Source: Octopus sinensis (lineage: Eukaryota). Taken from it: 64,000 nucleotides of DNA. The translations under genes and the position numbers were made by a program. Positions 16,908-39,593 of the stretch are shown in pieces. The DNA is taken from the NCBI RefSeq assembly GCF_006345805.1, contig NC_043000.1:57350001-57414000 (forward strand), read 5' to 3'. Under the pieces are notes generated by a model, which made no database searches, had not been told where the DNA came from, and was given only the letters and a program-made list of their open reading frames with translations. Numbering within the stretch: the stretch's first letter is position 1; every line of letters begins with the position of its first letter.

Positions 16908-17150
16908 CTCTTCATAGATCGATGGGTCTTTGAATGATGGTGATTCATAAAAATAATGCAGATATGACTTCACTCCAATATAGTCCCGACTGAGATCATT
17001 GCTATCCTGTTTACCAACTGTTTTGAACAGTAGGCGTTTGGTTGACGCCAGTGAGCTGTTTCGGTGTCCTTCTTCAGCTTCACTATTCAAAGCTTCAAGA
17101 TCTTCTTCGAAGCTGCCAGCTGTCGCTTCTGTTGAAGTGACGTTCTCCAT
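16908..17150 (-). CDS. NRSN1: First coding exon of a neurensin-family (vesicular membrane protein) gene, 81 codons, partial gene
   Basis: MENVTS...DYIGVKSYLHYFYESPSFKDPSIYEE matches the neurensin N-terminal motif YGVRSYLHQFYE (recalled from human NRSN1; NRSN1 versus NRSN2 orthology unresolved). Acceptor TTCTTGCAG| ends at 17165, exon starts 17164; phase-0 donor GAG|GTTTGT at 16907. Confidence 0.72.
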
Positions 17151-18167
17151 TTTGGTTCATAAACCTGCAAGAAAGACAAGTCAAAAAGATAGAAATCAAT
17201 ATATGTATTTGTAAATGTTTGTGCATGTGTGTGTGTGTGTTTGTGCATGTGGATGTGTGTCTAAAAGTATCAAGAATTAGGTAAATCAAAAACAATATAT
17301 TAAACAAAAAATAAAATTCCAAATCAATATGCGTAGGTGTTTATGGAGCAGGCTTACGTACTATGTATACATATCTATGTATATCTAATATGTGTGCATG
17401 TGAGTGCATGTTTGTGTGTATACATTCACATATGTACACACATGTATGCATGCATATAGCATTATAAAAGACTATTAATTTAAGTATTACAGCTTTTTAG
17501 AGTGTTATAAGCTCATCTCTAAAAAATGTGATCTTATGAGTGTGATGTTTCACTAATTGAAAGTCTAATTCTCATATGCTAAATTCATTAAATTTGTAAA
17601 CTATTGATTTTTGATACTTATATCTTGTGTGCATGTGCATATGTTTTGATTACAGATCTAAGAAGCCAAAGAAACTATAAAAAAAAATTGACAAATACAT
17701 CATGCTGCTGCCATTGCTAATATGTGAAAAACCTACCTAATACATCGCCATATTGTCATTTGTAATAAACACAAGAAAATATTCACAAAACAGCACCATA
17801 TCATTATAGCTAACAATAGAAAAAAAACTCACACAATTCTGTATGATAATGTCTTAGCTGACATCAGAAAATTTTTTTTATAAACAACTTCACACTGTTA
17901 TGGCTAACACCAGGAAAACTACTAAAATATACTATCATTTATAAACCTTGAAAAAGTTAAAAACACAGCACTAGTCATGTCATGCCTATAGTAGAAAAAT
18001 CTTTTAAAAGGCTGTGTGGTTAAGAAGCTCACTTTGCAATCATGCAGTTTCAGGTTCAATTCCACTGTGCAGTGCATTTGGCAGTGTCTTCTACTTTATT
18101 TCTGGGTCAGTCAATACCTGTAAGTGAATTATTGAATTCGGTAGACAGAAACTGCATGAAAGACTAT

Positions 18168-18219
<52 letters not shown>

Positions 18220-18228
18220 AATTTAAAT

Positions 18229-18359
18229 AAAAATGGGGAAGTCCAGTTTATGGGAATACCTTAGGTTTAAGAGGTCATGGGTCAACAGGTTTTTGGGATC
18301 TGACAATATGCCATAAAGCTAAACCTAAGGTAATCCTATAAACTGGCCTTCCCATTTTT
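18229..18359. mobile_element. Small inverted-repeat element (MITE-like)
   Basis: Arms 18229-18269 and 18320-18359 are reverse complementary with a few mismatches; the internal part resembles 30560-30620 in reverse. Confidence 0.6.
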
Positions 18360-18408
18360 AATTAATAATATGTACTGCTGTTTCTTCTTTTGAATCTATG
18401 CCTTTTAC

Positions 18409-18454
<46 letters not shown>

Positions 18455-18455
<1 letters not shown>

Positions 18456-18874
18456 TACTCTTTTACTCTTTTACTTGATTCAGTCATTTGACTGCGGCCA
18501 TGCTGGAGCACCGCCTTTTTTTAGTCGAGCAAATCGACCCCGGGACTTATTCTTTGTAAGCCCAGTACTTATTCTATCGGTCTCTTTTGCCAAACCGCTA
18601 AGTGACGGGGATGTAAACACACCAGCATCTGTTGTCAAGCAATGCTAGGGGGACAAACACAGACAGACAAACACACACACACATACATATATATATATAC
18701 ATACATATATACGACAGGCTTCTTTCAGTTTCCGTCTACCAAATCCACTCACAAGGCATTGGTCGGCCCGGGGCTATTGCAGAAGACACTTGCCCAAGAT
18801 GCCACGCAGTGGGACTGAACCCGGAACCATGTGGCTGGTTAGCAAGCTACTAACCACACAGCCACTCCTGCGCC
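18455..18874 (-). mobile_element. tRNA-derived SINE (family A), near-intact
   Basis: Minus strand starts GGCGCAGGAGTGGCTGTGTGG, has CCGGGTTCAGTCCC and ends in (AGTAAAAG)n. Confidence 0.9.
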
Positions 18875-20371
18875 TATATGGTATATATATATATATATAA
18901 GTGTGCATATGTGTGTGGTGTATGTATGTGTGCATGCACATATGTGTGTGTGTGTGTTTGTCCCCAGCACTACTTAACAACTGGTGTGAGTTTGCTTACG
19001 TCCTTGTAACTTAGCAGTTCAGCAAAAGTTACTGATAGAATAAGTACCAGACTCAAAAAATGTAAGTATCAAGGTCCCTGATTAAATCCTATAAGGTGAT
19101 GCCCCATCATGGCCACAGTCTAATGACTAAAGCAAGTAAGAAAATAAAATATAATAGAATGCAGTTATAGCTAACATGAAAATAAATCTTTAAAATTCTG
19201 CTCGTGGCTGTGTGGTAAGAAGCTTGCTCCCAACTACATGGTTCCAGGTTCAGTCCCACAGCATGGCACCTTGGGCAAGTGACTATTATTATAGCCTTGT
19301 GGATGGATTTAGTAGATGGAGGCTGAAAAAAGCTCATCATATGTGTTTGTATCTGTGTGTGTATTTCTTTGTCTCTGTATTTGTCCCCAACTCTTGCTTG
19401 ACAACTGGTGCAGGTTTGTTTACATCCCCATCACTTAATGGTTCACTAAAGAGGTCAATAGAATAAGTACCACGCTTAACAAAAAGTATTGTGGTTGATT
19501 TGTTCAACTAAAAACTCTTCAGGGTGATGCCCTAGTATGGCTGCTGTCTAATGATTGAAACAAGTAGATAGAAAAATAGATAGAAAAAAATAAGATAAAG
19601 ATATATTGTCAATACTTGTACTAGAAATATCTTAAAAATTCTGCATCAAACTCATGTGGATATGTTACTTTCACTGTGCTATATATGTTATTTCAACCAA
19701 TCAGAAAATTTGGCTTAGAGAGTAATAGCCTGCTAATCCGTTTTGGAGTTATATTAAGCAGGTTAAAAATCTTATTGTTTTCTTGAGCTATTTGCTCAGC
19801 ATCAGACAAGTTTCTTTTCCACACCAATAGGTACAATTAAGGTATCTTATTCTCTCTCTCTCCCCCACCCCTTCTCCCACTCGCTCTTGTTAAGATTAAG
19901 AAAACTTTTGAATTCTACACTATGTCATCATTGTTAACACAAGGAAAATATTTAAAATGCAGTGCTATATTTAACACTAATAAAACCAATAGAATACAGG
20001 GTATTATACTGCCATGACTGACACTAGAAATCCCTTAACAGAAAACCCACAAAGTTCTGCATCATTCTGTCATAGCTAACATGAGAAAAATATTCACATT
20101 GCAGAAATGTGATTATTGTATGTCAGAACCTGTTCACTGTATAATTTACAATTATAAATGACTGGATCAATAAGGTATTGAGCTATAGGTGATAGGATTG
20201 ATGGCTTGTATTTTCAACAGTGTTACGTCAATGGTGATAACACTTAACTCTTGCTGACTCTGTTTACCTAGCTGTAAAGAGTGGGAACATTGAATTATTA
20301 AGCAGTGTTCCATTAGCTTGCTGTTGCAGTGAAAAGCTGTTGAAGTATTCATCCTTAGTTCACGGTCTCCA

Positions 20372-20680
20372 CCTGTGGAGGCACATGGCCTAGTGGTTAG
20401 AGCAGCAGACTTGCGGTCGACGGATTGCGGGTTTGAATCTTAGACCAGGGCAATGTATGTGTTTATGAGCGAAACACCTAAGCTTCATGCGGCTCCAGCA
20501 GAAGCTAATGTCAAACCTCTGCTGACTTTCGCCACAACTTTCTGTCACTCTTTCCTCCTGCATCTTGCAGTTCACCTGCGATGGACCGGTGTCCCATCCA
20601 GGTGGGGAACCTATACACCAAGGAAACTTGGAAACCAGCACTTATGAGCCAGGTGTGGCTCAAGAAGGAACAAACAACAG
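20372..20680 (+). mobile_element. tRNA-derived SINE (family C-related head)
   Basis: TGGAGGCACATGGCCTAGTGGTTAGAGCAGCAGAC...GGGTTTGAATCTT head as at 2371, with a different 3' body. Confidence 0.7.
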
Positions 20681-21899
20681 TCTCCACCTGTCTCTGTCAG
20701 ATCAGGTTTTATTCTCTGCTTCTCATTCAAACTTGCTTATAGATTCAGACCCCAATTCTAATTCTGGGTGCATATGACAGAGGTGCATATGTGAAGGCAC
20801 ATGGCTCAGTGGTTAAGGTGTTGGACTCACAATCATAAGATTGTGGTTTTGATCCCTGGACCGGGTGATCCATTGTATTATTGAGCAAAACCCTTCATTT
20901 TATGGTGCTCCAGTCCACTCAGCTGTAGAACTGAGTTTAGCCTGGAGAGGGATGGGCCCTGCCAGGTTTTCTCACCCTAAATATACTACATGGCTTCAGC
21001 AACCCAACAACCCCTAAGTAGTTAAAGGACTTGTCAACTGTAAACAACAAACAGGTGTATTAGTTTAATGCTTGGGAAGGTGAGAAAGTCTTTTATGTTT
21101 CGAGCCTACACACTTCAACAGAAAGGAGCACAAGAAAATAAACAGAGAGAGAATAAAAAAAAGCTTTAGTGGCTAGCGATACAATGGGCTTCTTTCAGTT
21201 TCTGTCTGCCAAATCCACTCACAAGGCTTTGGCTGGTCTGAGGCTATAGTAGAAGACACTTGCCCAAGGTGCCACACAGTGGGACTGAACTCAGAACCAT
21301 GTGGTTGAGAAGTAAGCTTCTTACCACGCAGCCTATGAATGTATGTGTGTGTGTGTATATATATATATATACATATATAAATATATATATGTATATGTAT
21401 TTATGTATCTATGTGTATATATATATATATATAATAATAAAATAAATGCGCACTTTTAAAGCCTAGCCAGGCTCATGGGCCTGGTTTCCAGGTTTCAATG
21501 GCATGTGTTCCCCAGCTGGACGGGACGCCAGTCCATCACAGTGTTACTCATTTTTGCCAGCTGAGTGGACTGGAGCAACGTGAAATGAAGTGTTTTGCTC
21601 AAGAACACAACATGTCGCCCGGTCCAGGAATCGAAACCACAATCTTACGCTAATGATGCTGACACCCTAACCACTAAGCCACACGCCTCCACAATATATA
21701 TATATATATAGCTAAGCAATTAAGGGTTTAGCAACGAATTGCCTCACCACACACCGAATTTAGAAATAGCAGTCAAAGAGTTATAGCTATTCCTTTCTAC
21801 TAAAAGGGAGATCTCAGTAAAAACACAGCACTTGAAAGGCAAACACAGACAGGTAAGAGAGAATGAAATGACGGCAATCTATCATACAATTTTAAGTCA

Positions 21900-21990
21900 C
21901 CTACGGACGTACGTTTCGAAATTAAGTTTTAGGAAAGCATAAGAATTAGATAATTATATCTTACCCAACTTCTTTTCTCATCAGCGTAGG
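21900..21990 (-). ncRNA. Type I hammerhead ribozyme, fully canonical core, long stem II
   Basis: Minus strand: CCUACG-CUGAUGA-GAAA-(52 nt)-UUUC-GAAAC-GUAC-GUC/CGUAGG; P1 6 bp, P2 base 4 bp, palindromic ACGUACGU stem III; predicted cut between 21906 and 21905. Confidence 0.85.
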
Positions 21991-22159
21991 ACACTACAAT
22001 TATGAATAATTGTATATTAAATTTCGAGATACTAGAAGGCATCATCTCAACTCATCGATTTTTCACCCTCATTTATAATAATTATATATATATATATAAT
22101 TTCTGGAATTATTACATTCCCTAGGTATTAATAAAATATATATATATATATAGAATATC

Positions 22160-22395
22160 CCGGAAGCAGCTGTAAGACCTTCTTAATATAAATGTTCTAA
22201 AATCTTTCACACCCTTTGATTTTTATCTCATTCTAAAAATTTTTTTTATATACACACATGCTGATATATGGCCTACATTGGACTCCTCATTCGCATAATC
22301 TCGGACCCTAGAGCTTAACTATAGTCTGTCCATAGCACTTACTCAGCATTAACTGACACATTTGGGTCTTATTGAAACCATTAGCTCTCATAACT
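22160..22395 (+). mobile_element. Penelope-like repeat homologous to 7225-7430, starting in a decayed HHR 3' half
   Basis: GAAGC-AGCU-GUA-AGACC at 22163-22179, then CTTAACTAT(A/G)GTCTGTC and CTGACAC..TTTGGGTCT blocks shared with 7225-7430. Confidence 0.6.
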
Positions 22396-22441
22396 GATAT
22401 ATATACATATTTATCTATCTATCCATCTATCTATCTATCTA

Positions 22442-22495
<54 letters not shown>

Positions 22496-23309
22496 AACAT
22501 GTCTTCAAATCTTACCTCTTTTATATTAATTGCACAATAAAATAAGACATAGAGTTTATTCTCAAAATGCTACAAACTTATGTGTGTACATCTTGTCTAT
22601 ATGCTGAAGTATTGATTGTATGTTTGTGTGACTTGATATTTATTTGTCTTGCTTGTTTGTGCCATACATTCATTTTTAGATGTATTTATTCCATATTAAG
22701 TGTCCTGTGAATGTGTTTATGTATTGTACCTGTTTTCATGCTTTGTTTGTGTTTCTTTGTGTGTGGGTTCACTATATGATGTGCATATATATATCTGTGG
22801 GTTTGATTCATACGTGTCATATCTAAATATCTATAAGTCATGTCTTTGTATGTGTGTATGCATTTTTGATACATGTGTGTCTTATCTACATATCTTAATC
22901 TTATGCCTTTTATGTATGTGTGTGCTTGTCTGCTTTCATATGTATGTCTGTACTTTTGTATGTGCCCACGCATAACACTCTAATGTCTTTCTTTCATGAA
23001 TGATAGGAAGTTATTTTTCCATGTTGATAAAATAAGAAAAGATATTCTTCTCTTTTGAAGTTTTAAGGCATGGAAATGTAACAGAAGTGATTTTAGACAA
23101 AAGACAATGTATTTAAGAGTACATTTATAGATACATCTTAGCAATTCAACTGATTATTTTTTGCTAATTTCACAGCACACTCAAACAAACACAGATTCTG
23201 AATTTTACCAGTATTTATGCTTGTATGTACATACATACATACATACATACATACATACATACATACATACATACTTACATACATACATACATACATACAT
23301 ACATGCATG

Positions 23310-23341
<32 letters not shown>

Positions 23342-23384
23342 CATACATATGTATATACATACATATGTACATACATACATTGCC

Positions 23385-23595
23385 AGTACTGCCTGACTGC
23401 CCCTTGTGCTGGTGGCACATAAAAGCACCCACTACACTCTCAAAGTGGTTGGTGTTAGGAAGGGCATCCAGCTGTAGAAACTCTACCAGATCAGATTGGA
23501 GTCTGGTGCAGCCATCTGGTTCGCCAGACCTCAGTCAAATCGTCCAACCCATGCTAGCATGAAAAGTGGACGTTAAACAATGATGATGATGATGA
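23385..23595 (+). mobile_element. RTE-tail-type retroposon
   Basis: Same GTTAGGAAGGGCATCCAGCTGTAGAAAC module and (GAT)n tail; further copies at 8800-8995, 30290-30440, 43965-44400, 45240-45570 and 55760-55990 (+), and 26830-27110 and 56190-56390 (-). Confidence 0.8.
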
Positions 23596-23759
23596 TTCAC
23601 ACACACATACATACATACATACATACATACATACATACATACATACATACATACATACATACATACATACATACATGGATTGAAGACATGGCTATATTCT
23701 GGTTGTAGTTCTTTTATGAAGGGTTTTTTTCTTTAAATATTTTCTTTTGAGTCTCTCAT

Positions 23760-24820
23760 TGTTCACTTGGAATAATAAGGCTCCCAAATTCATCATTACA
23801 CTTTTTCACATGTCAGAAAGTAAAGATGCATCACCATGTCAAGGCACCACTGGTACCTTTGTCGCATGGGATGCACATATATGTCCAATCTTGTGGGACC
23901 ATGTGCTCCTCTCCACAGACACAGTTATTTGCTTACCTGTATTGATAGGTACACCATGTGGATCAATGTCATTCCACTAACCAACATCACAACCTGAGAT
24001 TGTCATCAAAGCATTTACACAGTAGTGGATTTCTAGGTCTACTGCTCTATCTACCATCACAATTGATGAGAGACAGCAGTTTGAGTCCAAGTTATTCACA
24101 AAGCTAACACAATTACCTGTTTGCAATCAAAACTGAACTACCACTTACCATTCAACAGCTAACAGTACAGAATATTTCCCTTACCGACTTGGCTCAAGTC
24201 AGCACTGGAAGTTCAGGCAATGATATGGTTACCTTCCTTTTGTGCTACAAGGTATTTTTTTGACAATGAAAGATGAAAGTGGGTGTACTACTGCTGAATT
24301 CTGGCATGGAAATATCAACAAATTACAAAACAGAGAATAACACCCTGTCAGCCCACCACAATGTGAGACTCATTAAACTATACTCACAGACTGCATGAAT
24401 ACCTGACCTGTACTCTACCTATTATCACTTGGTCACAGCAGACCAAAGTAGGGGTCCCTGCAAGACCTCTCCAAATGTTTACATGATTTGTTTGCTGTAA
24501 TGCAATCAAGAAACCACTTCAGACAGCAAGATTGTTCTGTTGCATTGAAATGATGCACAGAATTCCCAAGTATTTAACCCTAATATACATGACAAATTGG
24601 AGATTTTGGCACCAGCTATCTGAAGCCACCACATCTGGATAGCAATCTAACCACAGAATCTCAATCAGCAACAACTATAGCATTACCATCAACCATCCTT
24701 ACACCAGTAACTCAACCTACTGTCTATGCCTCTGTTACCAGTTCCAACAATCTTTTTACCCAGTAAACAAGGAAGACTAAGACAAGACAACACATCAACT
24801 AGCCAATCCATTTTGTAAAA
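23760..24820 (+). mobile_element. Ty3/gypsy integrase relic
   Basis: Frameshifted translation gives CQKVKMHHHVKAP, VGP, YLLTCIDRYTMW, WISR..TITID..QFESKLF, TTTYHSTAN, GCTTAE, typical of gypsy rve integrase. Confidence 0.8.
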
Positions 24821-25461
24821 ATATTTCATTTCTCATTAGCAAGTTTTGCATCATTTTTCATTTTTCCTACCGTTTATCAATTGCTACTTCCCCAGTCATC
24901 AAGAAAGTGGATTGATATAGTGACTACAGTAATAATGGCTTCATAGTTTTGTTATATGCTATTTTAGCCTACAAGAAATATTAATCTATGAAAGGCTAGT
25001 AGTCTGAGAGCCTTATTTTGTTACAATTTAAAAGATCAACTACCTTCGAGCCACTCAACACCAGATATGTCAATCAGCTGACCTTCCAACATGTTTTTAT
25101 ACAAACATCAGAAAGCAACAATGAACCAACAAAATGGAATCATCTTTCTTTCAGCTATCCAAATCATGGTACATATTGACAAGAATAAAGAATCTCTTTC
25201 TACCAGTTAAAAAACATGTTATCTATTTTTACAGCTATCAGTTATCTGTTTGATAATTGTTTTACAAACATGAACAATCTCTATGTACATTTTTATAACA
25301 TTTTCTACAACACATTTCAACTGACATTGTAAAACAAGATATACATGTACATTTCCATCACACATTATTCAATTAACTTTCTAAAAACTAAAAATATGTA
25401 TGTTTATTTCTAAACATACTTATATTTGATCTTGTAAATTGTATTCCTGAATTTTGTTCTA

Positions 25462-26027
25462 TTGGGTTGTCCAGAAAGTTCGTGCCGATTTATAGTAGCT
25501 TACCTTTTGACTTATTTTAGAACATGGTTGAGTCCATAAAATAGGATTTGACTACACCTCCATTTAGAGCACAGTTTAAGCTATCTTTTTGTGGAAGAAG
25601 GTTTATGTTCCTATAACCTGTGTTAATTTTGTAACCCTTTAAAATGGAAGATAAGAAAGTTCCTTTTCAGCACTTGATGCTTTGGGAACCAGACAAAAAT
25701 TGCTGCAGCTCGGCTGGGATGTGTTACCCCACCCACCATATTTACCAGATATTGTTCCTTCGGATTTCCACTTATTCAGGTCTCTGTAGAATAGTCTTAA
25801 TGGTAAAAATTTCAATTCCTTGGATGACGTAAAAAGATACCTTGATGAATTCTTTGCCATGAATCCACCTCAAATCCGGGAAGAGGGTATTTTCAAGTTA
25901 AAGGAATGATGGAGACGCATTATGTAACAAAATGGTTCATAAGTGGTTGATTAAAAATGTAATGGCAAGTATTTATTGACCTTTTTCTTTCCTTTAAAAA
26001 TCGGCACAAACTTTCCGGACAACCCAA
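25462..26027 (+). mobile_element. Internally deleted mariner
   Basis: TA|TTGGGTTGTCCAGAAAGTTCGTGCCGATTT and AAATCGGCACAAACTTTCCGGACAACCCAA|TA; C-terminal GWDVLPHPPYLPDIVPSDFHLFRSL. Confidence 0.93.
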
Positions 26028-26214
26028 TATTTAACTTATATTCACAAATCATGTACTATGTGCCAATTGAATTATTCTGTCAACAAGATCGAAAGATGTC
26101 TAATTTTGTTGATATGAAGAAAATAAAAATAAAAATGATATATGTTTCATTCTTGCTTTAAGTTCTCTACAATTATCTTTAATGCTTCAGAGTTGTGTGT
26201 GCGTGTGTGCACGC

Positions 26215-26245
<31 letters not shown>

Positions 26246-27719
26246 TGTATGTATGTATGTATGTATGTATGTACGTACGTACGTATGTATGTATGTATGT
26301 ATGTACACTAACAAATACATCCACTCTTTTTTGTCTTGTCGGATCCAAGAACCTTCCAAACCAACCAGAATGTTGTTTTTGATCAGGTTTGCCTTCCTAA
26401 CTGTAATGTATTTATCTATCATAGAGAATCTCTATGTGCTGATAACTAGAAATAAAATCAATAGAAAAGTGTCACTTTTTGTTTGGATACTCTAAAATAA
26501 GAGTTAAAGCCTTTAAATAAATGATATTTTAAATCACTTATTAATTTGACAATATATGACTATATAATTTATATAATTGTATCACTAAATAAGTTCCAGC
26601 CAGAGTAAACATCTTTGCAAATCTGGAGCCAGTAGGATTTTCTGAGTGCTGGGAAGGTGCCTGATAGATTCACTCTGTACCCTTGGGCTAGAGATAGAAG
26701 TTTTTTTTTTTTTTTTATGGGATGATACCATTAGTGTTTTATTTGCTCCATTACATCCTTAATGTTGCAATGGAGAAGAGAGTGACTACTTCCATAACTG
26801 AATGAACTAAGGCATCAAAGTATTTTAATCATCATCATCATTTAACATCTGCCTTCCATACTAGCATGGGTTGGACAGTTTAACAGGAGCTGGCTAGATA
26901 GAAGACTACACCAGCTTCAGTGTCTGTTTTAGTGGTTTTCCTAACACCAATCACCCTGCAGAGTGGACTGAGTGCTTTTTATGTGGCACCAGCACAGGTG
27001 ATGTCAGTTTTTACATGGTTTTTACATCTGGATGCCTTTTCAAATGCCAACCACTTCACAATGTGGACTAGATGCTTTTTACATGGCACCAGCACCAGCA
27101 GGGTCACCAAGTAACTTGCAAGACATCAGTAAATTATATTTTTCAGCCTGTGGCTTTTGGGATGGTGGTGGGTGTTAGACTGCAGACAAGTAAGTTTTTG
27201 ACTTTATTAGCATCCTGCCTTACCGATATTTGAGATTAGTCATGGGCAAACTGCTACTTTTGGGATTTTCTGAATGGCACACCTAACAAAAGATTACTTT
27301 GAATTCTTTTTCAGTAGTGCAACCTGCCTAATAATGATCCATATCTTGTGAGGTGTGCTTCTTGAAAAAGATTACCCATGCCTGTTTTTGATGATACTTG
27401 GGAGGCTGCCTGGCTGTACAGACCTCAGCCTCACAATCACCTTCAGTAATGCCTTGAGTTTGGAGTGTCTCAAAAATTTTAGAGAGGAGCACCAATTTCC
27501 TCTAGCATGTTGTATAAGGGAATGGATTGTGCATGCCTCTATTTTGATTATTTATTTACTGATTTCCTTTTTCACTTTGTTTTCTTTTTTCTTTTTCTTA
27601 TGGCTTACTTTTGTAGACTTATAAACCATAAAGGGTAGTATTTATACAATGGTTCTACACATATATGAAAAAAAAAACTTTTTATTCAATAGTCAAATAT
27701 CTAGAAAACAATAGTAGTT

Positions 27720-28110
27720 TAAAATTTTGGCACAAGGCCAGCAATTTTAGGGGAGAAGGTAAGTCAACTGCATTAACTTTGCTGTTCAACTGGTAATTAT
27801 TTTATCAACTCTGTAAGGATGAAAAGCAAAGTTATCCTTGGCAGAATTTGAACTCAGAATGTAATGAGCCAGGAGAAATGCTGCAAAACATTTTGTCCAT
27901 CTCACTAATGATTCTATCAGCTTGCTGTCACGGATAAAATAATACTTTCTACTATATGCACAAAGCCTGAAATTTTTTGGCAGGGGTCAGTCAATTACAT
28001 CAACTCAAGTGCTCACCTAGTAATTAATTTATTGACCTCAAAAGGACAAAAGGCAAATCAACCTTGACAGAATTTGAACTCAGGACATGAAGCATTTTGT
28101 CTATTCTACT
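27720..28110 (-). mobile_element. Two tandem family-B SINEs; a similar pair lies at 29510-29910
   Basis: Repeated GGCACAAGGCCAGCAATTTT...GAATTTGAACTCAGAA modules. Confidence 0.7.
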
Positions 28111-28132
28111 TCTCATCACTTAGCCTTAGATG

Positions 28133-29340
28133 TAAGGGTGGGCAGAAAAGTTCACAGGCTGACTATGAAAGAGTGATGCTAATACTGTGAAATCTTGCAT
28201 GCATTAATTTCAACTCTTCTTATTAATATCTGCATTATTTCTTTTTGTGTAAACTGACATCTGACTCTTCAAAAAAGACATCAAAAACTAACTAGTAGCT
28301 ACTTCCCTTGAAAATAGACAAAATTTGGTATCATGGTGATATCAAGTACCCGAAGGAAAAGAGTTTATCCCCCAGGGACATTTATGCTGACATGGTTGCT
28401 ACATTAGGGGATGATGCTCCAGGTTTATCAACAATGCAAAAGTGGGTAACTGAATTTAGGAGAGGAAGGAAGAGTCTTGAAGATAACCCAAGTTCTGGGC
28501 ATCCTGTAACTGCAACCACAGAGGAAATCATTGATTGTGTTTGCCACATACTGTTGGATAACAAAGATTGACTATAAATCAAATAGCCAATGCTATTAAC
28601 ATATCCCATGAAAGAGTTAAGAATGTTCTGCACAATGAACTTGGCATGGCAAAGGTTTCTGCTCGGTGGGTGCCACATCTTCTGACATCTGATCAAAAGC
28701 ACAGCAGGTTGATTATGTCACAGGGAAATCTAACATTGCTTCAGGCAGATCCAACTGGTTTTCTTGAAATTTCCCAACCCAGGATGAGTGTTGGCTTCAT
28801 CAATTTGAGTCAAAGACAAAGAGACAATTGATGCAGTGGAAACACACCTCCTCACCTGCTCCAAAGAAGGTCATGGCCATTTTATCTGCAGGGAACGTGA
28901 CAGCCTCAGTTTTTTTGGAATGCAAAAGACATGTTTATTGACTGTCTTCAAAAGGACCACACTATCAATGCAAAGCACTATGCCAACTTGCTGAAGCAGT
29001 TATGAAAGCTAACAAGACCAAACACCCAAGAAAACTGATGAAAGAGGTCTTGTTTCATCAGGACAGTGTTCCAGCACGCAAGCCCTTGGTTTCAATGGCT
29101 GCTGTGCATGACTGTGGTTTTAAACTGGTTGATCAGCCTTCCTAATCTCCTGATTTATCCCCATCTACCATCTGTTCCCCAATATGGAAAAATGCTTCAC
29201 TAGGAGCCAGTATCACAGTGATGAGGACATTATATCTGCTGCTGATGACTTTTTTGACCGACAGATTGAAAGCTCCCTCACCAATGGGATCCAAGCACTG
29301 CAATACCAATGGAAGAGGTTTGTGGACTGCAAAGGGGAAG
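28133..29340 (+). mobile_element. Mariner transposon, 3'-truncated, disrupted
   Basis: Left TIR-like AGGGTGGGCAGAAAAGTTCACAGGCTGAC; QKWVTEFRRGRKSLEDNPSSGHP, SARWVPHLLT, FHQDSVP, SPDLSPS motifs. Confidence 0.9.
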
Positions 29341-31062
29341 TTTTCCAGTAACTTTCTTTGCTGAACTCATTGAACTCAGAATCCTGGAACTAGCACCTTA
29401 ATTTGTGAACTTGCCAACAATGTTGTTGTAAGCACTCACTTTTATCTTTATCTTCTGGATATTGATTTGAGACAACGATAAAGAATTTCACCTAAATACA
29501 ATGAATATTGATTTCAAATTCTGGCATAAGACCAGCAAGTTCTGGGTAGGTAAATCGAATACATTGACCCCAGTATGCAACTGGTACTTATTTTATTGAT
29601 CTTCAAAGGATGAAAGACAAAGTTGACCTCAGTGGAATTTGAACTCAGAACGTAAAGACGGATGAAATGTCACTAAACATTTTCCCTAGCATGCTAACAA
29701 TTCTGCCAACTTGCTACCTATAGTTTCAAACTTTGGCACAAGGCCAGCAATTTCGGGGTAGAGGGTAAATTGATTATATTGATCCCAATGCTCAATTGGA
29801 ACTTATTTTATCAACCCCAAAAGGGATGAAAGGCAAAGTCAGCCTCAGGCAATTTGAACTCAGAATGTAAAGACGAATGAAATACTGCTAAGTATTTCAC
29901 CCAGTGTGATTATGGCTATGCTATTTCAACTATATAATGATTTACTCTGATGTCGAATTTTATAATGTAACCTTTTCCTGTTCTTTGTATTTCGTAATCA
30001 TTTTTGTTACAATTATGAAGAAAGTATCCATTATTGAATATATATGAAATCGAATATTCTTCTATTGTTTTATTTGTTTCAGTTATTGAACTGTGGACAT
30101 GCTCATGCACGGTCTTGAAAAGTATAGATTTAGGTGTTCAAGTTGACCTCAGGACCTAAATCTTTCAAGTCTAGTACTTATTCCATCAGTCTGCTTTTAT
30201 GAACTGCTATGGTTACAGGGACATAAAGAGACCAACAATGGTTGTTGGGTAGTGTGGGAGCACACACACACACACACATTTGCAAATGCATATATATGGC
30301 GTTAGGAAGGGCATCCAGCCGTAGAAACACTGCCAAATCTGACTGGGCCTGATGAAGCCTTCCGGCTTCACAGACCCCAGTTAAACTGTCCAACCCATGC
30401 TAGCATGGAAAACGGACGCCAAATGATGATGATGATGATGATATATACAGTTTCTTTTAGAAAAACATAAATTCGGAGGAGTACAGTCTAAGAAGTAGAG
30501 CAGTCTATATTAATTACTGGTGAAGGCTGGTTTATAAGGTTACACTGGGTTTCTCACCATAAAGGTCCCCTTTATGGCATATCTTCAGACCCTAAAACCT
30601 GATGGCCTATGGCACCTTTAAAATATTTAACATATATATGAAAGCCTCTCTATCTCTCTCTGACCATGTTGACAGCTTTAAGGCAATCAATAAGAGACAG
30701 TCAACATCTTTCACAGATATTTTATGGTGACTGAAGAAGGATAAAATGAAGTACAGCATTAATTGGTCCATAGTAAGGTATGCAAAATCATACAATATAA
30801 TTTCCAGGAGATGCCATCTCTACTCCAAGGAATCCCTGTCTATTTGTGGACTAACGAGAAGATAATTAATAGAATTTCTGAACGACTCTCGAGATGCCTA
30901 CATGCATATAAATGCAGTGAGAATAAATTTTGAGTAACCATTAATTTAATTTAATTTAATTTCAGGTATGGATGACTTAAGTTTACTTTAAACCTCCTCA
31001 TTCTTATAAACACCAAGTAAATAACTAACTCTCTTTGTGATCATGAGTGCACCAAACCTTAC

Positions 31063-31270
31063 GTGTGCGTATGCTCACATTTTCGCGGATGCGTGTATGA
31101 GCGAATGTACTCGTCCCATGCTTGCCTGAGGGCGTTTATACATCCATATCTCTTAACGATTATTTTTAATACTCTTCTCACTGGATTGCATGTTCGTTTC
31201 TCTTTTTGTCCTCTGTGATTTTATTTTTGATCTTCTGTATAAATGAAGATATTTCCTCCGTCTGGTTGTT
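31063..31270 (-). other. Candidate non-coding 5' exon
   Basis: Unique CpG-containing sequence ending in a minus-strand donor CAC|GTAAGG at 31062; same orientation as the neurensin exon. The 5' limit is a guess. Confidence 0.3.
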
Positions 31271-31513
31271 TTTCTCTCTACAAAACGGAAAGTTATATTG
31301 CAGAACAGTGATTTTAACAAGTTGTATTTATTTATTTAACACCTGACGAGATACATCTGTACCACCGGATGTTCCTGAACCAGTTGTTTAGTGTCCCACC
31401 CAAGAGGAATCGATGCTAGATGTGTTGAAACAATTGTTGTGATTAATAATAAATTCTCGTATATTCCATCTTCTGTCTTTAATTTGTTACATGTGTGTGT
31501 GCGTGTGTGTGTG

Positions 31514-31563
<50 letters not shown>

Positions 31564-31795
31564 CTGTTGTGTTTGGGGAGAGTCATTCTCTTCTGGTGCC
31601 TTATAATTTAACACACTCACCGGTTAAATTTCTACTTATTTCTTTTTCATTTTTCTGAAATTTTCGTTGCGTCTTGCAACTGGTGAGTGTGTTAAATTAT
31701 AAGGCACTAAAAGAGAATGACTCTCTCCAGACACAACAGAATATGCTTCAACACACGAACTCACATAAAGAATCTTGCAAACCAAATTCAAAAAC
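31564..31795. mobile_element. Fold-back Penelope-like repeat (62-bp arms, 52-nt spacer, extra ~55-bp tail)
   Basis: 31564-31625 is the reverse complement of 31678-31739; same family as 51749-51980. Confidence 0.8.
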
Positions 31796-33989
31796 GATAC
31801 ACACACAAACACACACAGTCTCCGTCTCGTAAATTCACTTACAAGGAATTGATCGGCTCTGAACGGCTACAATAGAAGATACTTGCCCAAGGTGCCGTAC
31901 AGTGGGACTGAACCCGTAACCAAGTGGTTGAGAAACAAACTTCTTAACCATGCAGCTATATCAAAGCCAATACAATAACTTTCCTCTTATTTATTTATTT
32001 ATTAGTCGTTCTCCCAGAAGAAATTCAACACCGAAAACCCATTTTGATGTTTGATTGTAGGAGAACGTGTTAAAAATGAATTTACAACTAGTTTTCAGCT
32101 CCATTTCTAAACTTGGTGCTATTAAGACAAGAATTATCTCCCTTAGACTTGTTCCACTAAACTGAAACTCGTACGCTTAGTTGTTTTGCAGGGCGATTGT
32201 GAGATGAGTAGTGACTAGTAATTTGAACTGTATGACAGTTTGGATGTTTCACTTATATAAGCGACTGGAAGCTATTGAAATAAAGAAGCCTTCCAGTAAA
32301 GACTGGCGACAACGAAATCTGGCGTCACGATTCTATTTCGGATGTTTATTTGGTTGTGAAACACCCAAGTTTAAACTAATGGTATCTGATTTAAGCACAA
32401 GGCCAGTCATTTTTTTTTTTAATAGGAGGGGTTAGTCGATGACAGTCGATATAAAGGTGAAAGTAAACTGCACTGAAAAATGCCATGATTTCGTTATCAC
32501 AGGCCTTAATTATAGAGTATCTTCTAGTGATAGCATGAGCCTTTCTGAAATAGCAGCTGAAGTACATGAATACCAAATAATGAACACCAGTGAAAAGCAA
32601 CAGGGACTTATTTGATGTGTGTGTGTGCGTGCGGGCGCGCTGGTGGTGGTGGTGCCGCGCGTGCGAAGTTGTGGAACCATTCTTTAAATTTTGATAATCC
32701 AACGATGAGAGCACCCATACACGGCCTATCGAGGAGCGACAGCTACTTGTCAAGAAGGAACTTGGGAAACAATGGAACGAGTGATTAACATCATATCTGT
32801 ATTAGCGTGAGGCGATAGCGATATAAGTTCAAATTATGTGTACATTCTTATGCATCGTTTTCATGTTAAATAATTATAATTCAATTCTGATGTTCTTCCC
32901 AGTTTCTATCATAACTTTGGTTAACGGTATAACTTTTTTTTTAGAAAATTACGATTTGAATTTAATAATTACATATATATCACGTATGTATATGATACAA
33001 ATACAATACAAAACTGTATTAAAAATAAATAAAAAAAAACGAAGAAAATACACAAACATGAGCAAGGAAAGAAAAAAAATGAAAACTTCAATTTACTTCC
33101 ATATTTTTAAGACGCTAAACTGCATGTTAACCTTTTGATCCTAAAGGGAGGAAACACCTAATTGGCCTCGACGAGATTTGAACTCAGAACGTAAGGAGTC
33201 TCAAGAACCACTGCAAGGCGTTTAACGATTCTTCCAACCCATCACTTTTTTTCCTTAAAAGGTTCGAACAGTGTCTTTCTAATTTTGCGATAATCGAAAA
33301 GAATATTTTATATTCCTACTGGATTGCTGTAACTTCAAATAAAATGAAAAAGCGCGTTACAAAGAAAGGGTTACTAAAAGTGGAGTAAATATTTCACTAA
33401 TTATTTCGTTTTCCTGAGATAACTAATACTCTCGAGTCAGTGAAGGAACTTCTACATGATCGTAAAGCCAGTAAAATATAGAAGCTATCTGTCCCTCAAA
33501 ACACACTATCATTTATTTAAAATGGAATCATTATATAATGAGATTCAGGATACATTATTTCTGAAATTATGACAAGACGGTCACAGCTTGAATACTTTTG
33601 ATATCAGAGGTGTGTTCAATCAGGGCTGGCTTGAAGCTAAACAACAGCAACAAACGTACTGTAGAAGGGCATGAATGATTCATATAAATCTAGAATTTTA
33701 TAGCTTTATAAGAAATATATAATACGCGTTGTTTTAGGGGTCAAATGCTACTGAGATTGACTCCTTTTCATTTCTCGCAAAATCTCCCTTACAACCCCAA
33801 TTACTGACCTAGCTTTCGAGTCCATCTTTAGATCCAAAATGGCTAACCTTGAACAACTTCTGAAAAACATTGAAGTAATTGAACTCCACCAAGGTTTTTT
33901 TTTTTATACCTAGGAATTACAAATCAATTCCTAAGCTATTGTATTTTCTGAGAGTTAGTCCCTCTTATAGATTCCTGTCGTCCCTCCAA

Positions 33990-34980
33990 TACTTTGACGA
34001 CCTAATCTTCAGGAAACTCTCCCGCGACTAAGCGGTTTGGGGGTCTAGGTCTGCGCAACTGCTCGTCATTATCTCTTCCCTGTTTTTTCCCTCCATCCAC
34101 GCTTGCTCCCCTTTGGTAGGCAACATCTTCTCCTCTCCAACATGGACTGATTCAAACAGGAAGATGGATGAAGCTCTGTCACAGTGGAGAGAGCTGGGTT
34201 TGTCAGTTCCGGTTACAGTGGAGGATAGACGGAAACAGAGAGTATGGAACAATCTGCGTTCAGGTGCCACTTTCAACTCTCTCCTTGATCAATCTGATTA
34301 ATTTTCAAGGTATCGTCTACTTTCAGCTAGTGCAAAATTCTCGGGCGACTGGATTGATGCCCTGCCTATGACCAACATTGAGGGTCTACTCGGTCTAGAT
34401 GAACTCCGCATCTCCATCGCACACAGAGTGGGAGTTGACGTCTGTAGGGACTGAGATACCACTGTGGTAGGCCCCCTCGACCACACAGGCCTTCACGGTC
34501 TGTCTTGCCGCCTAAATTTTGGTTGCTTCACTTGCCACACCAAGCTAAACCTAATCATTAAGCGGGCCCTGGCTCGGATTAATATCCCCTCATTGCTGGA
34601 GCCGTCGGGGTTATCCAAAAGCGATGAAAGAGACCAGATGGTCTTCTCTTCTGTTCTGGATCAGAGGTAGGTATCTCATTTGGGACACCACAGTCTGTGA
34701 CTCCTTTGCTCCCTCCCACATGCTGCAGTTAATGAGAGTGTCACTGCTTCCGTAGACGAACGGAAGAAAACTCTGAATTATCAGGACCTGACAGTGAACT
34801 ATCTATTCCAGCGTGTGGCGTTTGAGACGTTTGGAAGGACAGGGCCACTAAACACGAAGTTCTTGTCAACGTTCTCAGCTCACCTTACCGAGGTGACATC
34901 TGATGCCCGTGAGGGCGATTGGTAAAGCTGTGGTAATGCTGCGAGTGTGCTGGTTTGCTGAATGGATAATATTAATTAAA
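33990..34980 (+). mobile_element. CRE-like non-LTR retrotransposon 3' fragment with restriction-like endonuclease, disrupted
   Basis: RFGGLGLR (RT C-terminal), SGDWIDALP, GLHGLSC..H..LN..IKRAL (zinc knuckle), KRPDG, YLIWDTTVCDS, ERKK..Y, VAFETFG across frames. Confidence 0.82.
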
Positions 34981-34984
34981 TTTA

Positions 34985-35190
34985 GGGCGGCGAGCTGGCA
35001 GAATCGTTAGCACGCCGGGCAAAATGTTCTGAGTTCAAATTCCGCCGAGGTCGACTTTGCCTTTCGTCCTTTCGGGGTCGATTAAATAAGTACCAGTTAC
35101 GCAATAGAGTCGATGTAATCGACTTAATCCCTTTGCATGTCCTTATTTGTCCCCTCTATGTTAAGACCCCTGTGTGCAATAAAGAAATAA
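34985..35190 (+). mobile_element. tRNA-derived SINE (family B), young with an internal deletion
   Basis: GGCGGCGAGCTGGCAGAATCGTTAGCACGCCGGGC...GAGTTCAAATTCCGCCGAGG; other copies at 40915-41115 and 42530-42665 (-), and 48870-49080, 55430-55550 and 56895-57100 (+). Confidence 0.9.
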
Positions 35191-36641
35191 ATATTTAATT
35201 TGATCTGGGCAAGTACCGGTGAAAAAGCTGGACATTTTTCGAATAATTTGTCACAGTCATTATGAACATTTTTGATATCCACACGTGTACATTATTGTGC
35301 ACCAATATAGTATAGTCATTGTCTTTTTAATTTGGCAAATACGGGAGAGGCTAAGCTTTGCTGAAGAAGTTTAATAAGGCCAAAATATGGCTGGAATTGT
35401 CACCTGTACACGTTAAGATCGATATGTGTCAATGTAATGGATAGCTTGAAGTATGGGTGTATTTTTATGCATAAACACATTCACTCTTTCTATTCTGTCA
35501 GATCCAAACATCACAATTCACTCACCAGAATTTCGTTTTCAGGGAGATTATTTATTAATTATATCCCCCCCCCCCACTACATCAAATACAGTGGCCATAA
35601 TTGGTTTATTGCAACTCTTGGTGGCGTCATATTTGCTACTTTAAATAAATTGCACGCACACTTTCATTGTTTCATCGCTTTGCTTAACTATCAATTGTTG
35701 ATGCTATTTAACCCTTCGTCAAGCTTATCAAAGGTATTTCAGCTGTCCCCAAACACATCCGGGACTATATTGTTCAATATGTCGGGTCTTTTCCTTACTT
35801 TCTGACGTGGTGTGATTCAGTTGTTATTTCTAGCAATTAAAGCCACCACGTATATGCTTCTGCGTAAACACAAATATTATCAAGCTTCGGACGAGACCAT
35901 ATTAACAATTCTTCAATTCTTATTTCACATGTACTTCCGATTTCTTGAAAAATCGGCTTTTGTGGAATTGAAATCACACATGTCCACCACGAACCAAAGA
36001 AGGAGCCTCTACGTTGTAGTTCCATCCGCTAAACATAAGAGCTACATCAATCACACCATACCGTTGAAAAAAGAAATAGGGAGGTAACGTAATCCTAGAT
36101 TCACTACATGAAATATAGACAGCTGGAATACTTTTGATCATAGGTCTGCTTACATTGCGTTCACCTGGGGATAAACAAGATATATCCATGCACATACATA
36201 AAACGGTGATTAAAAAAGATAACTAAAAACAAAGCCAGTTTATGCAAAAGAGGAAGGACAAAGATATCACTGATAACTATTTTATCAACCACCAAAGTGA
36301 AATGAAATATAATGCATGTTGAGTCCAGAGCTCCACTATTTCCCCCACGGTTCAGTATTCCCTAAACACTTTATGTTATTATTGTTTAGTTTCAGGTGTC
36401 AATATTTCCTCTTCACACACGACACAGGCGCTTATATAATCATGCACACTACATACTCATAATCTAACGCGCGCACACGCACGTGCATAACAACATTATC
36501 TTCGCGTGTACACACGTTAATTCACGTAAGTGGACAATCTCTGCTTGATTTAACATGCGGAAACTGTGGCACAGACAGACATAACACAACACTTTATCAA
36601 CATTTTATCACCGAGACATGGATCTGACTAGGAAAAAAATT

Positions 36642-36655
36642 GTTTCCATGACAAC
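36642..36655. promoter_or_regulatory. RFX X-box consensus match
   Basis: GTTTCCATGACAAC fits GTNNYY-AT-RRNAAC and lies in unique CpG-retaining sequence. Confidence 0.45.
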
Positions 36656-36788: not shown

Positions 36789-36844
<56 letters not shown>

Positions 36845-37902: not shown

Positions 37903-39569
<1,667 letters not shown>

Positions 39570-39593
39570 TCTATCTGTCTGTCTATCTATCTG

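What the first reader, a model, noticed from the sequence alone, without database searches (positions are those of the whole stretch)
21900..21990. Canonical hammerhead in the sense orientation of the probable neurensin intron
Seen: every core nucleotide is intact, with a 6-bp P1 followed by a 2x2 internal loop and further pairing (AGU/ACU), and a long structured P2 (AAGUU/AACUU, UAAGA/UCUUA, GAUA/UAUC). It lies on the same strand as the neurensin exon, 4.7 kb upstream of its acceptor. Inference: if transcription starts at the 31-55 kb candidates, this HHR sits in the pre-mRNA and could cut it co-transcriptionally. Established: intronic hammerheads are known in other animals.
Basis: partly seen in the sequence, partly recalled or inferred. 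Interest (0 to 1): 0.72.

Follow-up and report, generated by a model that had tools for sequence, protein, structure and literature searches.

The report
Transposon-borne hammerhead ribozyme in octopus intron
A complete self-cleaving hammerhead ribozyme motif lies, in the sense direction, in the first intron of the Octopus sinensis neurensin gene, but it sits in a 372-bp insertion that the sister species O. vulgaris lacks, so it looks like an ordinary mobile-element ribozyme, not a conserved gene regulator.

Summary
Window 21900-21990 (minus strand) holds a type I hammerhead with every core nucleotide, a 6-bp helix I, a GUC cleavage site (cut after C21906) and a 60-nt helix II domain. A strict descriptor finds one in 1 of 300 shuffled windows. 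Rfam Hammerhead_1 scores it 23.6 bits, below the 34-bit cut-off.

A spliced octopus transcript contig and an O. vulgaris gene model both join an exon at window ~54.6 kb to the acceptor at 17164. The ribozyme therefore lies, in sense, in a 37.4-kb first intron.

It is not conserved. The window is O. sinensis. At the orthologous O. vulgaris site the 372 bp carrying the ribozyme are missing, leaving one (TA)n tract where O. sinensis has (TA)8 on both sides. O. bimaculoides, Argonauta and cuttlefish loci hold no counterpart.

Helix III is one C-G pair beyond the core A-U, capped by palindromic GUAC. This is the weak, dimer-dependent design of newt, retrozyme and Penelope-like-element hammerheads.

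Best reading: a solo copy of a hammerhead-bearing retroelement inserted into a TA microsatellite, with little or no effect on neurensin. It is a new member of a known kind, of low to moderate interest.

The parts
21900..21990 (-). Type I hammerhead ribozyme motif. Helix I 21990-21985 / 21905-21900; CUGAUGA 21984-21978; helix II domain 21977-21918; GAAA 21917-21914; helix III C21913, GUAC loop, G21908, U21907; cleavage after C21906.
   Evidence: Sequence; Rfam Hammerhead_1 at 23.6 bits over the full model; descriptor versus 300 shuffles.
21895..21995 (-). Extended helix I: a 2x2 internal loop (GU/UG), then AGU 21995-21993 paired with ACU 21897-21895.
   Evidence: Sequence. These pairs appear in both the MFE and the constrained folds.
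21918..21977 (-). Unusually long (60-nt) A/U-rich helix II domain: 4 bp (GAAA/UUUC), a 2x2 internal loop, a further 4-5 bp, then an ambiguous distal part.
   Evidence: Folded alone at -8.7 kcal/mol. It appears as a 56-nt insertion relative to the Rfam model.
21711..22082 (-). 372-bp non-coding insertion (GC 34.4%) that carries the hammerhead. Present in O. sinensis, absent at the orthologous site of O. vulgaris. No poly(A) tail and no ORF longer than 51 codons.
   Evidence: Collinear BLAST blocks; three-way alignment of filled and empty sites; composition; ORF pieces.
22083..22098 (.). (TA)8 tract on the upstream (minus-strand) side of the insertion. One half of the apparent target-site duplication or microsatellite target.
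   Evidence: the repeat finder D1/I1; O. vulgaris has a single (TA)7-8 tract here.
21694..21710 (.). (TA)8 tract on the downstream side of the insertion, directly abutting a SINE-like repeat (about 21450-21693).
17165..54612 (-). Intron 1 of the neurensin-1-like gene (37,448 nt). Donor GT at 54612-54611 (AGA|GTAAGT); acceptor AG at 17166-17165 (..cuuucuugcag|G). It contains the hammerhead in sense, 32.7 kb from the donor and 4.74 kb from the acceptor.
   Evidence: Spliced transcript contig L011, nt 8-30 = window 54633-54611 and nt 29-286 = window 17164-16907; O. vulgaris model P0005 and its gene range; splice signals.
54613..54681 (-). 3' part of exon 1, the 5'-UTR exon of the main mRNA. The O. 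vulgaris model P0005 reads it as MSEEGREK..KKER starting at ATG 54681. The 5' end (start site) is not defined here.
16908..17164 (-). Exon 2 of neurensin-1-like, with the start codon at 17150-17148. It encodes MENVTS...SIYEE, identical to residues 1-81 of P0002 (247 aa, Pfam Neurensin PF14927).

Best explanation
The motif is a genuine type I hammerhead carried by a short (372-bp), A/T-rich, non-coding mobile element. Its hallmarks are those of non-LTR retrozymes and Penelope-like-element (PLE) pseudo-LTRs.

One copy of this element inserted into a (TA)n microsatellite inside the 37.4-kb first intron of neurensin-1-like. This happened on the O. sinensis lineage after its split from O. vulgaris. 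It landed in the sense orientation, so it is transcribed as part of the pre-mRNA.

In its home element such a ribozyme cuts multimeric element transcripts into unit-length RNAs. With a helix III of only C-G beyond the core A-U, capped by GUAC, it does so mainly by pairing two copies through the self-complementary ACGUACGU segment. Here there is only one copy. Self-cleavage of the neurensin pre-mRNA is therefore expected to be slow or absent, and the ribozyme is most likely a passenger without a role in neurensin expression.

Shown: the motif, its strand, the intron, the presence/absence difference and the (TA)n flanks. Inferred: the polarity of the indel (insertion rather than deletion), the element class, and low activity as a monomer.
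For: - Motif and significance.
- The window is O. sinensis CM016862.1 (100% identity to L002).
- Empty site in O. vulgaris: window 21373-21708 and 22084-29337 are collinear with adjacent L001 segments, and 21709-22083 is missing. The alignment shows one (TA)n tract in O. vulgaris against (TA)8 - 372 bp - (TA)8 in O. sinensis.
- The element has no poly(A) tail and no coding capacity, and its GC content is 34%.
- No counterpart in 76 kb of O. vulgaris, 34 kb of O. bimaculoides, 33 kb of Argonauta or 39 kb of cuttlefish neurensin loci.
- Literature match on architecture: metazoan type I hammerheads typically have a 6-bp helix I, a 4-bp helix II and a 1-2-bp helix III capped by a small palindromic loop. 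They act as dimers. Most occur as single motifs, probably from truncated PLEs (PMC4209133).
- Literature match on element type: non-LTR retrozyme units have low GC and target-site duplications longer than 4 bp. Units are 350-390 bp in a mollusc, the mussel (PMC7229834).
- Literature match on target: PLEs show an insertion bias for microsatellites, with (TA)n preferred for some clades, and carry hammerheads in their pseudo-LTRs near the 3' end (PMC8557442).
- Retrozymes are reported to be PLE derivatives, and about 43% of Xenopus copies overlap introns (bioRxiv 10.64898/2026.07.22.740005).
- 235 Hammerhead_1 hits were reported in the giant squid genome (PMC6962438).
- Energetics: the hammerhead-compatible fold is -16.7 kcal/mol against an MFE of -20.3, and the ACGUACGU self-duplex is -9.8 kcal/mol.
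- The same window holds two further hammerhead-bearing repeats of other families, so such elements are frequent in this genome.
Against: - No second copy of this 372-bp element could be found with the tools available, because no octopus genome search exists here. Its repetitive, mobile nature is therefore inferred, not shown.
- No reverse-transcriptase or GIY-YIG domain occurs in 142 ORF pieces of the window, so the PLE link rests on analogy.
- The element is solo rather than tandem, and its predicted fold is not unusually stable (circular z = -1.0, linear z = -1.3). Retrozyme circRNAs are described as highly self-paired.
- The polarity of the indel is unresolved. The orthologous interval of O. 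bimaculoides is not alignable, and a deletion between the two (TA)8 tracts would leave the same empty site.
- A 60-nt helix II domain is atypical for this class.
- Invertebrate retrozyme hammerheads can cleave efficiently as monomers (PMC7229834), so low activity is not certain.
Confidence: 0.65

Rival explanations
1. One reading: an intronic hammerhead that cleaves the neurensin pre-mRNA co-transcriptionally and so modulates neurensin expression. On this view a young, species-specific regulatory element was co-opted from a transposon.
For: All core nucleotides, the GUC site and G10.1-C11.1 are intact. The motif lies in sense inside a transcript-supported 37.4-kb intron. Helix I (6 bp, then an internal loop) and helix II (4 bp, then an internal loop) have the spacing at which loop-loop contacts form in canonical type I hammerheads (PMC4209133). 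Some invertebrate retrozyme hammerheads cleave well as monomers (PMC7229834). Conserved intronic hammerheads exist in amniotes (cited in PMC7229834; Rfam HH9/HH10).
Against: The element is absent from the sister species at the same site and from the other cephalopod loci examined, so there is no evidence of selection. Helix III is minimal and palindromic, the dimer-dependent design. No partner copy lies in the window. The nearest-neighbour model places the active-compatible fold 3.6 kcal/mol above the MFE. In Xenopus, retrozymes are depleted from introns relative to intergenic DNA, which suggests such insertions are neutral or mildly harmful rather than recruited (bioRxiv 10.64898/2026.07.22.740005).
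Confidence: 0.1
2. The 372-bp segment is older and was lost in O. vulgaris by recombination or replication slippage between the two flanking (TA)8 tracts. On this view it is not a recent insertion in O. sinensis, although it could still be an old transposon remnant.
For: Identical (TA)8 tracts flank the segment, and the O. vulgaris site retains exactly one such tract. A deletion between direct repeats would produce this. The outgroup O. bimaculoides cannot decide, because the interval is not alignable there.
Against: The surrounding 1.5 kb (SINE-like repeats and microsatellites) is itself absent or unalignable in O. bimaculoides, so the whole neighbourhood is young. The hammerhead core and all helices are unmutated, as expected for a recent copy. 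Insertion into (TA)n with duplication of the target is the documented behaviour of PLE-type elements (PMC8557442). Another species-specific transposon insertion (a 1.27-kb mariner in O. vulgaris) lies 330 bp away, so insertion differences are common here.
Confidence: 0.15
3. Chance resemblance: an A/T-rich sequence that happens to contain CUGAUGA, GAAA and complementary flanks.
For: The Rfam score is below the gathering threshold and the match is not listed in whole-window scans. The MFE fold is not the hammerhead fold, and the fold z-score is only -1.44.
Against: The strict descriptor occurs in 1 of 300 shuffles (mean 0.003 per window). Every one of the conserved core positions, the GUC triplet, G10.1-C11.1 and the palindromic ACGUACGU helix III typical of metazoan type I hammerheads are present together.
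Confidence: 0.02

Closest known systems
Non-LTR retrozymes of metazoans (Cervera & de la Pena 2020, PMC7229834), including the 350-390-bp units of the mussel Mytilus galloprovincialis
   Same: Type I hammerhead. The carrier is non-coding and low in GC (34%). The unit size (372 bp) falls within the mollusc range. The flanking duplication is longer than 4 bp. There are no LTR, PBS, PPT or poly(A) features.
   Different: This is a solo copy, not a tandem array. The predicted fold is not notably self-paired (z about -1). Helix II is 60 nt rather than a short stem-loop. Expression as circRNA is unknown.
Hammerheads in the pseudo-LTRs of Penelope-like elements (Cervera & de la Pena 2014, PMC4209133; Craig et al. 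2021, PMC8557442)
   Same: Type I topology with a very weak helix III, implying action as a dimer. Such motifs occur mostly as single dispersed copies from truncated elements. The insertion lies in a (TA)n microsatellite. Inverted 5'-truncated pairs also occur, and the window has one at 4686-5235.
   Different: No RT/GIY-YIG ORF lies nearby. PLE 'min-HHRs' usually lack helix III altogether and have a shorter helix I, whereas this one has the 'canonical' 6-bp helix I and a 1-bp stem plus tetraloop. Homology to an octopus PLE could not be tested.
Newt satellite 2 and axolotl HHR_Amex1 hammerheads (dimer-dependent type I)
   Same: Helix III has a single base pair beyond A15.1-U16.1, capped by a palindromic tetraloop (GUAC here). 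These ribozymes are weak as monomers and efficient as dimers (PMC7229834).
   Different: Those sit in large tandem arrays that supply the partner copy. Here there is no partner. The loop 1 / loop 2 tertiary-contact nucleotides are not recognisable.
Conserved intronic hammerheads of amniotes (Rfam Hammerhead_HH9 RF02275 and HH10 RF02277)
   Same: A type I hammerhead in the sense strand of an intron of a protein-coding gene.
   Different: HH9 and HH10 are conserved at orthologous sites across amniotes. This one is missing even from the sister species. The Rfam HH9 model does not report this site.
Rfam Hammerhead_1 (RF00163)
   Same: Full-length match to the model with a perfect core (CUGAUGAG...CGAAACGUACGUC).
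   Different: The score is 23.6 bits against a 34-bit gathering threshold, because of the 56-nt insertion in helix II.

Membership tests
Hammerhead ribozyme, type I | Conserved core: C3 U4 G5 A6 N7 G8 A9, G12 A13 A14, A15.1-U16.1, H17 | tested here: met
   CUGAUGA 21984-21978, GAAA 21917-21914, U21907, C21906.
Hammerhead ribozyme, type I | Three helices around the core, with helix I open (type I topology) and helix II closed by G10.1-C11.1 | tested here: met
   Helix I has 6 bp plus 3 more after an internal loop. Helix II is closed by G21977-C21918 followed by three A-U pairs. Helix III is A-U and C-G with a GUAC loop.
Hammerhead ribozyme, type I | Score at or above Rfam's curated gathering threshold for RF00163 | tested here: not met
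   23.6 bits against 34, and no hit in the gathering scan. The deficit comes from the long helix II, not from the core.
Hammerhead ribozyme, type I | Site-specific self-cleavage giving 2',3'-cyclic phosphate and 5'-OH ends | not testable with these tools
   Needs an in vitro transcription and cleavage assay or RNA end mapping.
Non-LTR retrozyme | Short (about 170-400 bp), low-GC, non-coding unit containing a type I hammerhead | tested here: met
   372 bp, GC 34.4%, no ORF longer than 51 codons.
Non-LTR retrozyme | Tandem arrangement (at least 2 units, each with a hammerhead) | tested here: not met
   A single unit with no internal or adjacent repeat. It would count only as a 'solo monomer' derivative.
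Non-LTR retrozyme | Multi-copy family in the genome; expression as linear and circular RNA | not testable with these tools
   No octopus genome or transcriptome DNA search is available. Indirect attempts found nothing.
Non-LTR retrozyme | Highly self-paired (rod-like) unit RNA | tested here: inconclusive
   60% of bases are paired, and the MFE z-score is -1.0 (circular) or -1.3 (linear) against 200 shuffles.
Penelope-like element (pseudo-LTR fragment) | Hammerhead within a terminal repeat next to an RT + GIY-YIG ORF, or sequence homology to such a repeat | tested here: not met
   No RVT or GIY-YIG Pfam hit in 142 ORF pieces of the window. Homology to octopus PLE termini could not be tested.
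Penelope-like element (pseudo-LTR fragment) | Insertion bias for microsatellites, (TA)n in several clades | tested here: met
   (TA)8 on both sides, with a single (TA)n tract at the empty O. vulgaris site. The feature is as described in PMC8557442.
Conserved intronic hammerheads (HH9/HH10-like gene-associated ribozymes) | Location in the sense strand of an intron | tested here: met
   Intron 1 is defined by spliced contig L011 and model P0005.
Conserved intronic hammerheads (HH9/HH10-like gene-associated ribozymes) | Conservation at the orthologous site in related species | tested here: not met
   Absent in O. vulgaris. No counterpart in the O. bimaculoides, Argonauta or cuttlefish loci.

The most novel reading that the evidence does not exclude
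The insertion is a very young, species-specific, catalytically competent hammerhead. Its extended helix II would use an internal loop in place of loop 2 for the tertiary contact, making it active as a monomer. It would then cut the 37-kb first intron of neurensin co-transcriptionally in O. sinensis but not in O. vulgaris. That would make a natural presence/absence experiment on what a sense intronic ribozyme does to a neuronal gene's output.
Probability: 0.07. Interest if true: 0.55.

Novelty: new member of a known kind. Interest (0 to 1): 0.22.

Why it matters
If the main reading is right, this is one more dispersed copy of a hammerhead-bearing retroelement. That class is already documented across metazoans, and Rfam hits have been reported in a cephalopod genome. 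Its value is mainly as annotation. It should not be presented as a conserved regulatory ribozyme of neurensin.

Two modest points of interest remain. First, the filled site in O. sinensis and the empty site in O. vulgaris give a clean pair for asking whether a sense-strand hammerhead in a long intron has any effect on a host gene. Second, four hammerhead-like motifs of three unrelated sequence families lie in 64 kb. Two of the families have 57-60-nt helix II domains that Rfam thresholds miss. This suggests that octopus genomes hold many more such elements than covariance-model annotation reports.

Tried and rejected
- Rfam at gathering thresholds over the window gave no hit. The hammerhead appears only with permissive thresholds on a short stretch.
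- A search for further copies of the element in the window and in all fetched loci found none.
- The metagenome scan with CTGATGAG-N40-70-CGAAACGTACGTC gave 4 hits, none with a helix I, so they are chance matches.
- A 20-mer from helix II gave 1 hit in prokaryotic genomes, in a Pirellula MAG. About 1 is expected by chance in 596 Gb. It gave none in viral contigs.
- Using spurious ORFs across the element as protein probes to reach octopus read assemblies found no candidates and no record.
- Harvesting more octopus DNA through a LINE reverse-transcriptase fragment returned only two short metagenome contigs. My X-padding was miscounted, so the scored region lost the last 8 residues; this does not change the outcome.
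- No PLE protein domains (RVT, GIY-YIG) appeared among 142 ORF pieces of the window. Only mariner/Tc1 remnants were found.
- The supplement of PMC8557442, which might hold octopus PLE consensus sequences, is not held as text.
- O. bimaculoides as an outgroup to polarise the indel failed, because the interval is not alignable.
- Homology between this element and the palindromic hammerhead pair at 4.7-5.2 kb was tested and rejected. Only the ribozyme core is shared.
- The retrozyme-like rod structure of the insert is not significant.
- ARAGORN on the adjacent SINE-like repeat found no tRNA.
- A sub-threshold 'let-7' hit at 7186-7255 was rejected. It is a long perfect hairpin that matches many miRNA models on both strands.

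Full report
**What is at the coordinates.** Read on the minus strand, window 21990-21900 is CCUACG-CUGAUGA-G...C-GAAA-C-GUAC-G-U-C|CGUAGG. Every conserved hammerhead position is present:
- C3-A9 at 21984-21978.
- G12-A14 and A15.1 at 21917-21914.
- U16.1 at 21907 and C17 at 21906.
- G10.1-C11.1 as G21977-C21918.

Helix I is 6 bp (21990-21985 with 21905-21900). Cleavage would leave a 5'-OH at 21905. The topology is type I. The helix II domain is 60 nt. Folded alone it forms a closed, A/U-rich irregular hairpin of -8.7 kcal/mol, with 4 bp, a 2x2 loop and a further 4-5 bp at its base.

**Is it more than chance?** Rfam's Hammerhead_1 model aligns end to end with a perfect core. It scores 23.6 bits against a gathering score of 34, because 56 nt sit where about 10 are expected. 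The match is not reported in whole-window scans. I therefore wrote an explicit descriptor: CUGANGA, GAAA, UH, helix I of at least 6 contiguous pairs, helix II base of at least 3 pairs, and a helix III span of at most 8 nt. It is met in 1 of 300 dinucleotide-preserving shuffles of the window (mean 0.003) and three times in the real window.

**Where the window comes from and what the gene looks like.** The exon at 17164-16908 encodes residues 1-81 of a 247-aa neurensin (Pfam PF14927). The protein is identical in O. sinensis and O. vulgaris. The fetched O. sinensis locus (CM016862.1) is 100% identical to the window.

Two independent lines define the upstream intron:
- The O. vulgaris annotation contains an isoform (P0005) whose first 23 codons lie at window 54681-54613. 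They are followed by GTAAGT and are joined to the acceptor at 17164.
- A 1089-nt contig assembled from sequencing run SRR16213284 (L011) carries the uninterrupted 247-aa CDS and is closest to O. bimaculoides. Its nt 8-30 align to window 54633-54611, which covers the end of that upstream exon. Nt 29-286 align to window 17164-16907, and nt 284-1089 to the last exon outside the window.

Intron 1 therefore runs from 54612 to 17165 (37.4 kb). The hammerhead lies in it in the sense orientation, 4.74 kb from the acceptor.

**The ribozyme is not conserved.** The window aligns collinearly to the O. vulgaris locus at 95-99% identity, with one clean exception at the site of interest. Window 21373-21708 and 22084-29337 map to adjoining O. 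vulgaris segments, and 21709-22083 has no partner.

The three-way alignment shows the structure. O. vulgaris reads ...AAAUU(AU)n|UGUGGAGGCG... with a single (TA)7-8 tract. O. sinensis has (TA)8, then 372 bp containing the hammerhead, then (TA)8 again.

The segment has no similarity to anything else in:
- 76 kb of O. vulgaris,
- 34 kb of O. bimaculoides,
- 33 kb of Argonauta hians, or
- 39 kb of cuttlefish sequence around neurensin.

O. bimaculoides cannot polarise the event, because the whole 1.5-kb neighbourhood (window 21044-22570) is unalignable there.

**What the segment is.**
- It is 372 bp long with 34% GC.
- It has no ORF above 51 codons.
- It has no poly(A) tail and no terminal redundancy.
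- It is flanked by a duplicated TA microsatellite.

These are the published hallmarks of hammerhead-bearing retroelements of animals:
- Most metazoan type I hammerheads have a 6-bp helix I, a 4-bp helix II and a 1-2-bp helix III capped by a small palindromic loop. Most are dispersed single copies thought to derive from truncated Penelope-like elements (PMC4209133).
- Non-LTR retrozymes are low-GC units of about 170-400 bp, 350-390 bp in a mussel, with target-site duplications longer than 4 bp (PMC7229834).
- Penelope-like elements insert preferentially into microsatellites, (TA)n for some clades. They carry the ribozyme in their pseudo-LTRs and often form inverted 5'-truncated pairs (PMC8557442).
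- A recent preprint derives retrozymes from these pseudo-LTRs. It finds about 43% of Xenopus copies in introns, although depleted relative to intergenic DNA (10.64898/2026.07.22.740005).
- Hammerhead_1 hits have already been counted in a cephalopod genome, 235 in the giant squid (PMC6962438).

I could not show that the element is multi-copy or homologous to an octopus Penelope-like element. No tool here searches octopus DNA, and every indirect route failed. The predicted fold of the unit is not unusually stable. The class assignment is therefore an inference from anatomy, at roughly 0.6-0.75 confidence.

**How it most likely works.** Beyond the core A15.1-U16.1 pair, helix III is a single C-G pair closed by GUAC. 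The 8-nt stretch ACGUACGU is self-complementary, with a predicted duplex of -9.8 kcal/mol. This is the architecture of the newt and axolotl Amex1 ribozymes, which cleave poorly alone and efficiently when two copies pair (PMC4209133, PMC7229834).

In a multimeric element transcript, two such ribozymes would form the extended helix III and excise unit-length RNA. Here only one copy is present on the pre-mRNA. The nearest-neighbour model puts the hammerhead-compatible fold at -16.7 kcal/mol, against -20.3 for a competing fold that pairs part of the core.

I therefore expect slow or no self-cleavage in the intron and no role in neurensin expression. This step is inferred. Some invertebrate retrozyme ribozymes do cleave well as monomers (PMC7229834), and the 6-bp/4-bp spacing of the internal loops in helices I and II could in principle support a tertiary contact.

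**Verdict.** This is a new member of a known kind. Interest is low to moderate. Its main interest is as a natural presence/absence pair between sister species, and as a sign that long-helix-II hammerheads are under-annotated in octopus genomes.

Noticed in passing
window 4686-5235 (hammerheads at 4737-4824 minus strand and 5086-5173 plus strand): A ~550-bp palindrome made of two head-to-head arms. Each arm carries a second, unrelated type I hammerhead family: UGGACC-CUGAUGA-[57-nt helix II closed by A-U]-GAAA-CGUCUG-UA|GGUCCA. It lies in neurensin intron 2, with one arm in sense. It is conserved in O. vulgaris (97.8%) and O. bimaculoides (90.9%) but not in Argonauta. Across 6 copies, all substitutions but one (helix I, in one O. 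bimaculoides arm) fall inside helix II. The arrangement resembles the inverted 5'-truncated pairs described for Penelope-like elements.
   Followed up: partly
window 63434-63503 (minus strand): A third hammerhead family with a short helix II and a 3-bp helix III. Rfam Hammerhead_HH9 scores it 30.3 bits (gathering 52). It has A in place of the essential G12 (CAAAAC instead of CGAAAC), so it is probably dead. It is identical in O. vulgaris and lies upstream of neurensin exon 1.
   Followed up: partly
L001 42996-44271 (O. vulgaris), corresponding to window ~21375: O. vulgaris carries a 1.27-kb mariner-type insertion, with Mos1-like transposase ORF pieces, that O. sinensis lacks. It lies only ~330 bp from the hammerhead insertion site. 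This intron has gained different transposons in the two sister species.
   Followed up: partly
window 17141-17056 (minus strand) and 54681-54613: O. vulgaris protein model P0005 begins in the 5'-UTR exon (MSEEGREK...). It needs an 86-nt GT-AG 'mini-intron' inside exon 2 to reach the neurensin frame. The spliced transcript contig L011 keeps this segment, so P0005's N-terminus looks like an annotation artefact.
   Followed up: partly
window 7149-7292 and 51770-51900: Long, nearly perfect hairpins (MITE-like) that hit dozens of unrelated miRNA models on both strands, including a sub-threshold let-7 match (41.8 bits, gathering 53.5). The matches are nonspecific and this is not a let-7 gene. The arm sequence (AAGAAGGUCUUACAGCUG) recurs at 22150-22190, next to the hammerhead insertion.
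   Followed up: partly
window 21450-21693 (minus strand), also about 20830-20950 and 21180-21340: SINE-like repeats with tRNA-like A and B boxes by eye (GGCTTAGTGG ... GGTTTCGATTCC). One directly abuts the downstream (TA)8. ARAGORN calls no tRNA there.
   Followed up: partly
window 2995-3931 (minus), 10075-10991 (plus), 12316-12738 (minus): Decayed mariner/Tc1 DNA-transposon remnants (Pfam HTH_48, Transposase_1, DDE_3, DDE_1) in neurensin intron 2.
   Followed up: partly
L009 8883-9001 and 30678-30795 (cuttlefish Acanthosepion pharaonis): Two 5S-rRNA matches above the Rfam gathering score flank the cuttlefish neurensin gene. They may be 5S-derived SINEs or dispersed 5S genes.
   Followed up: no
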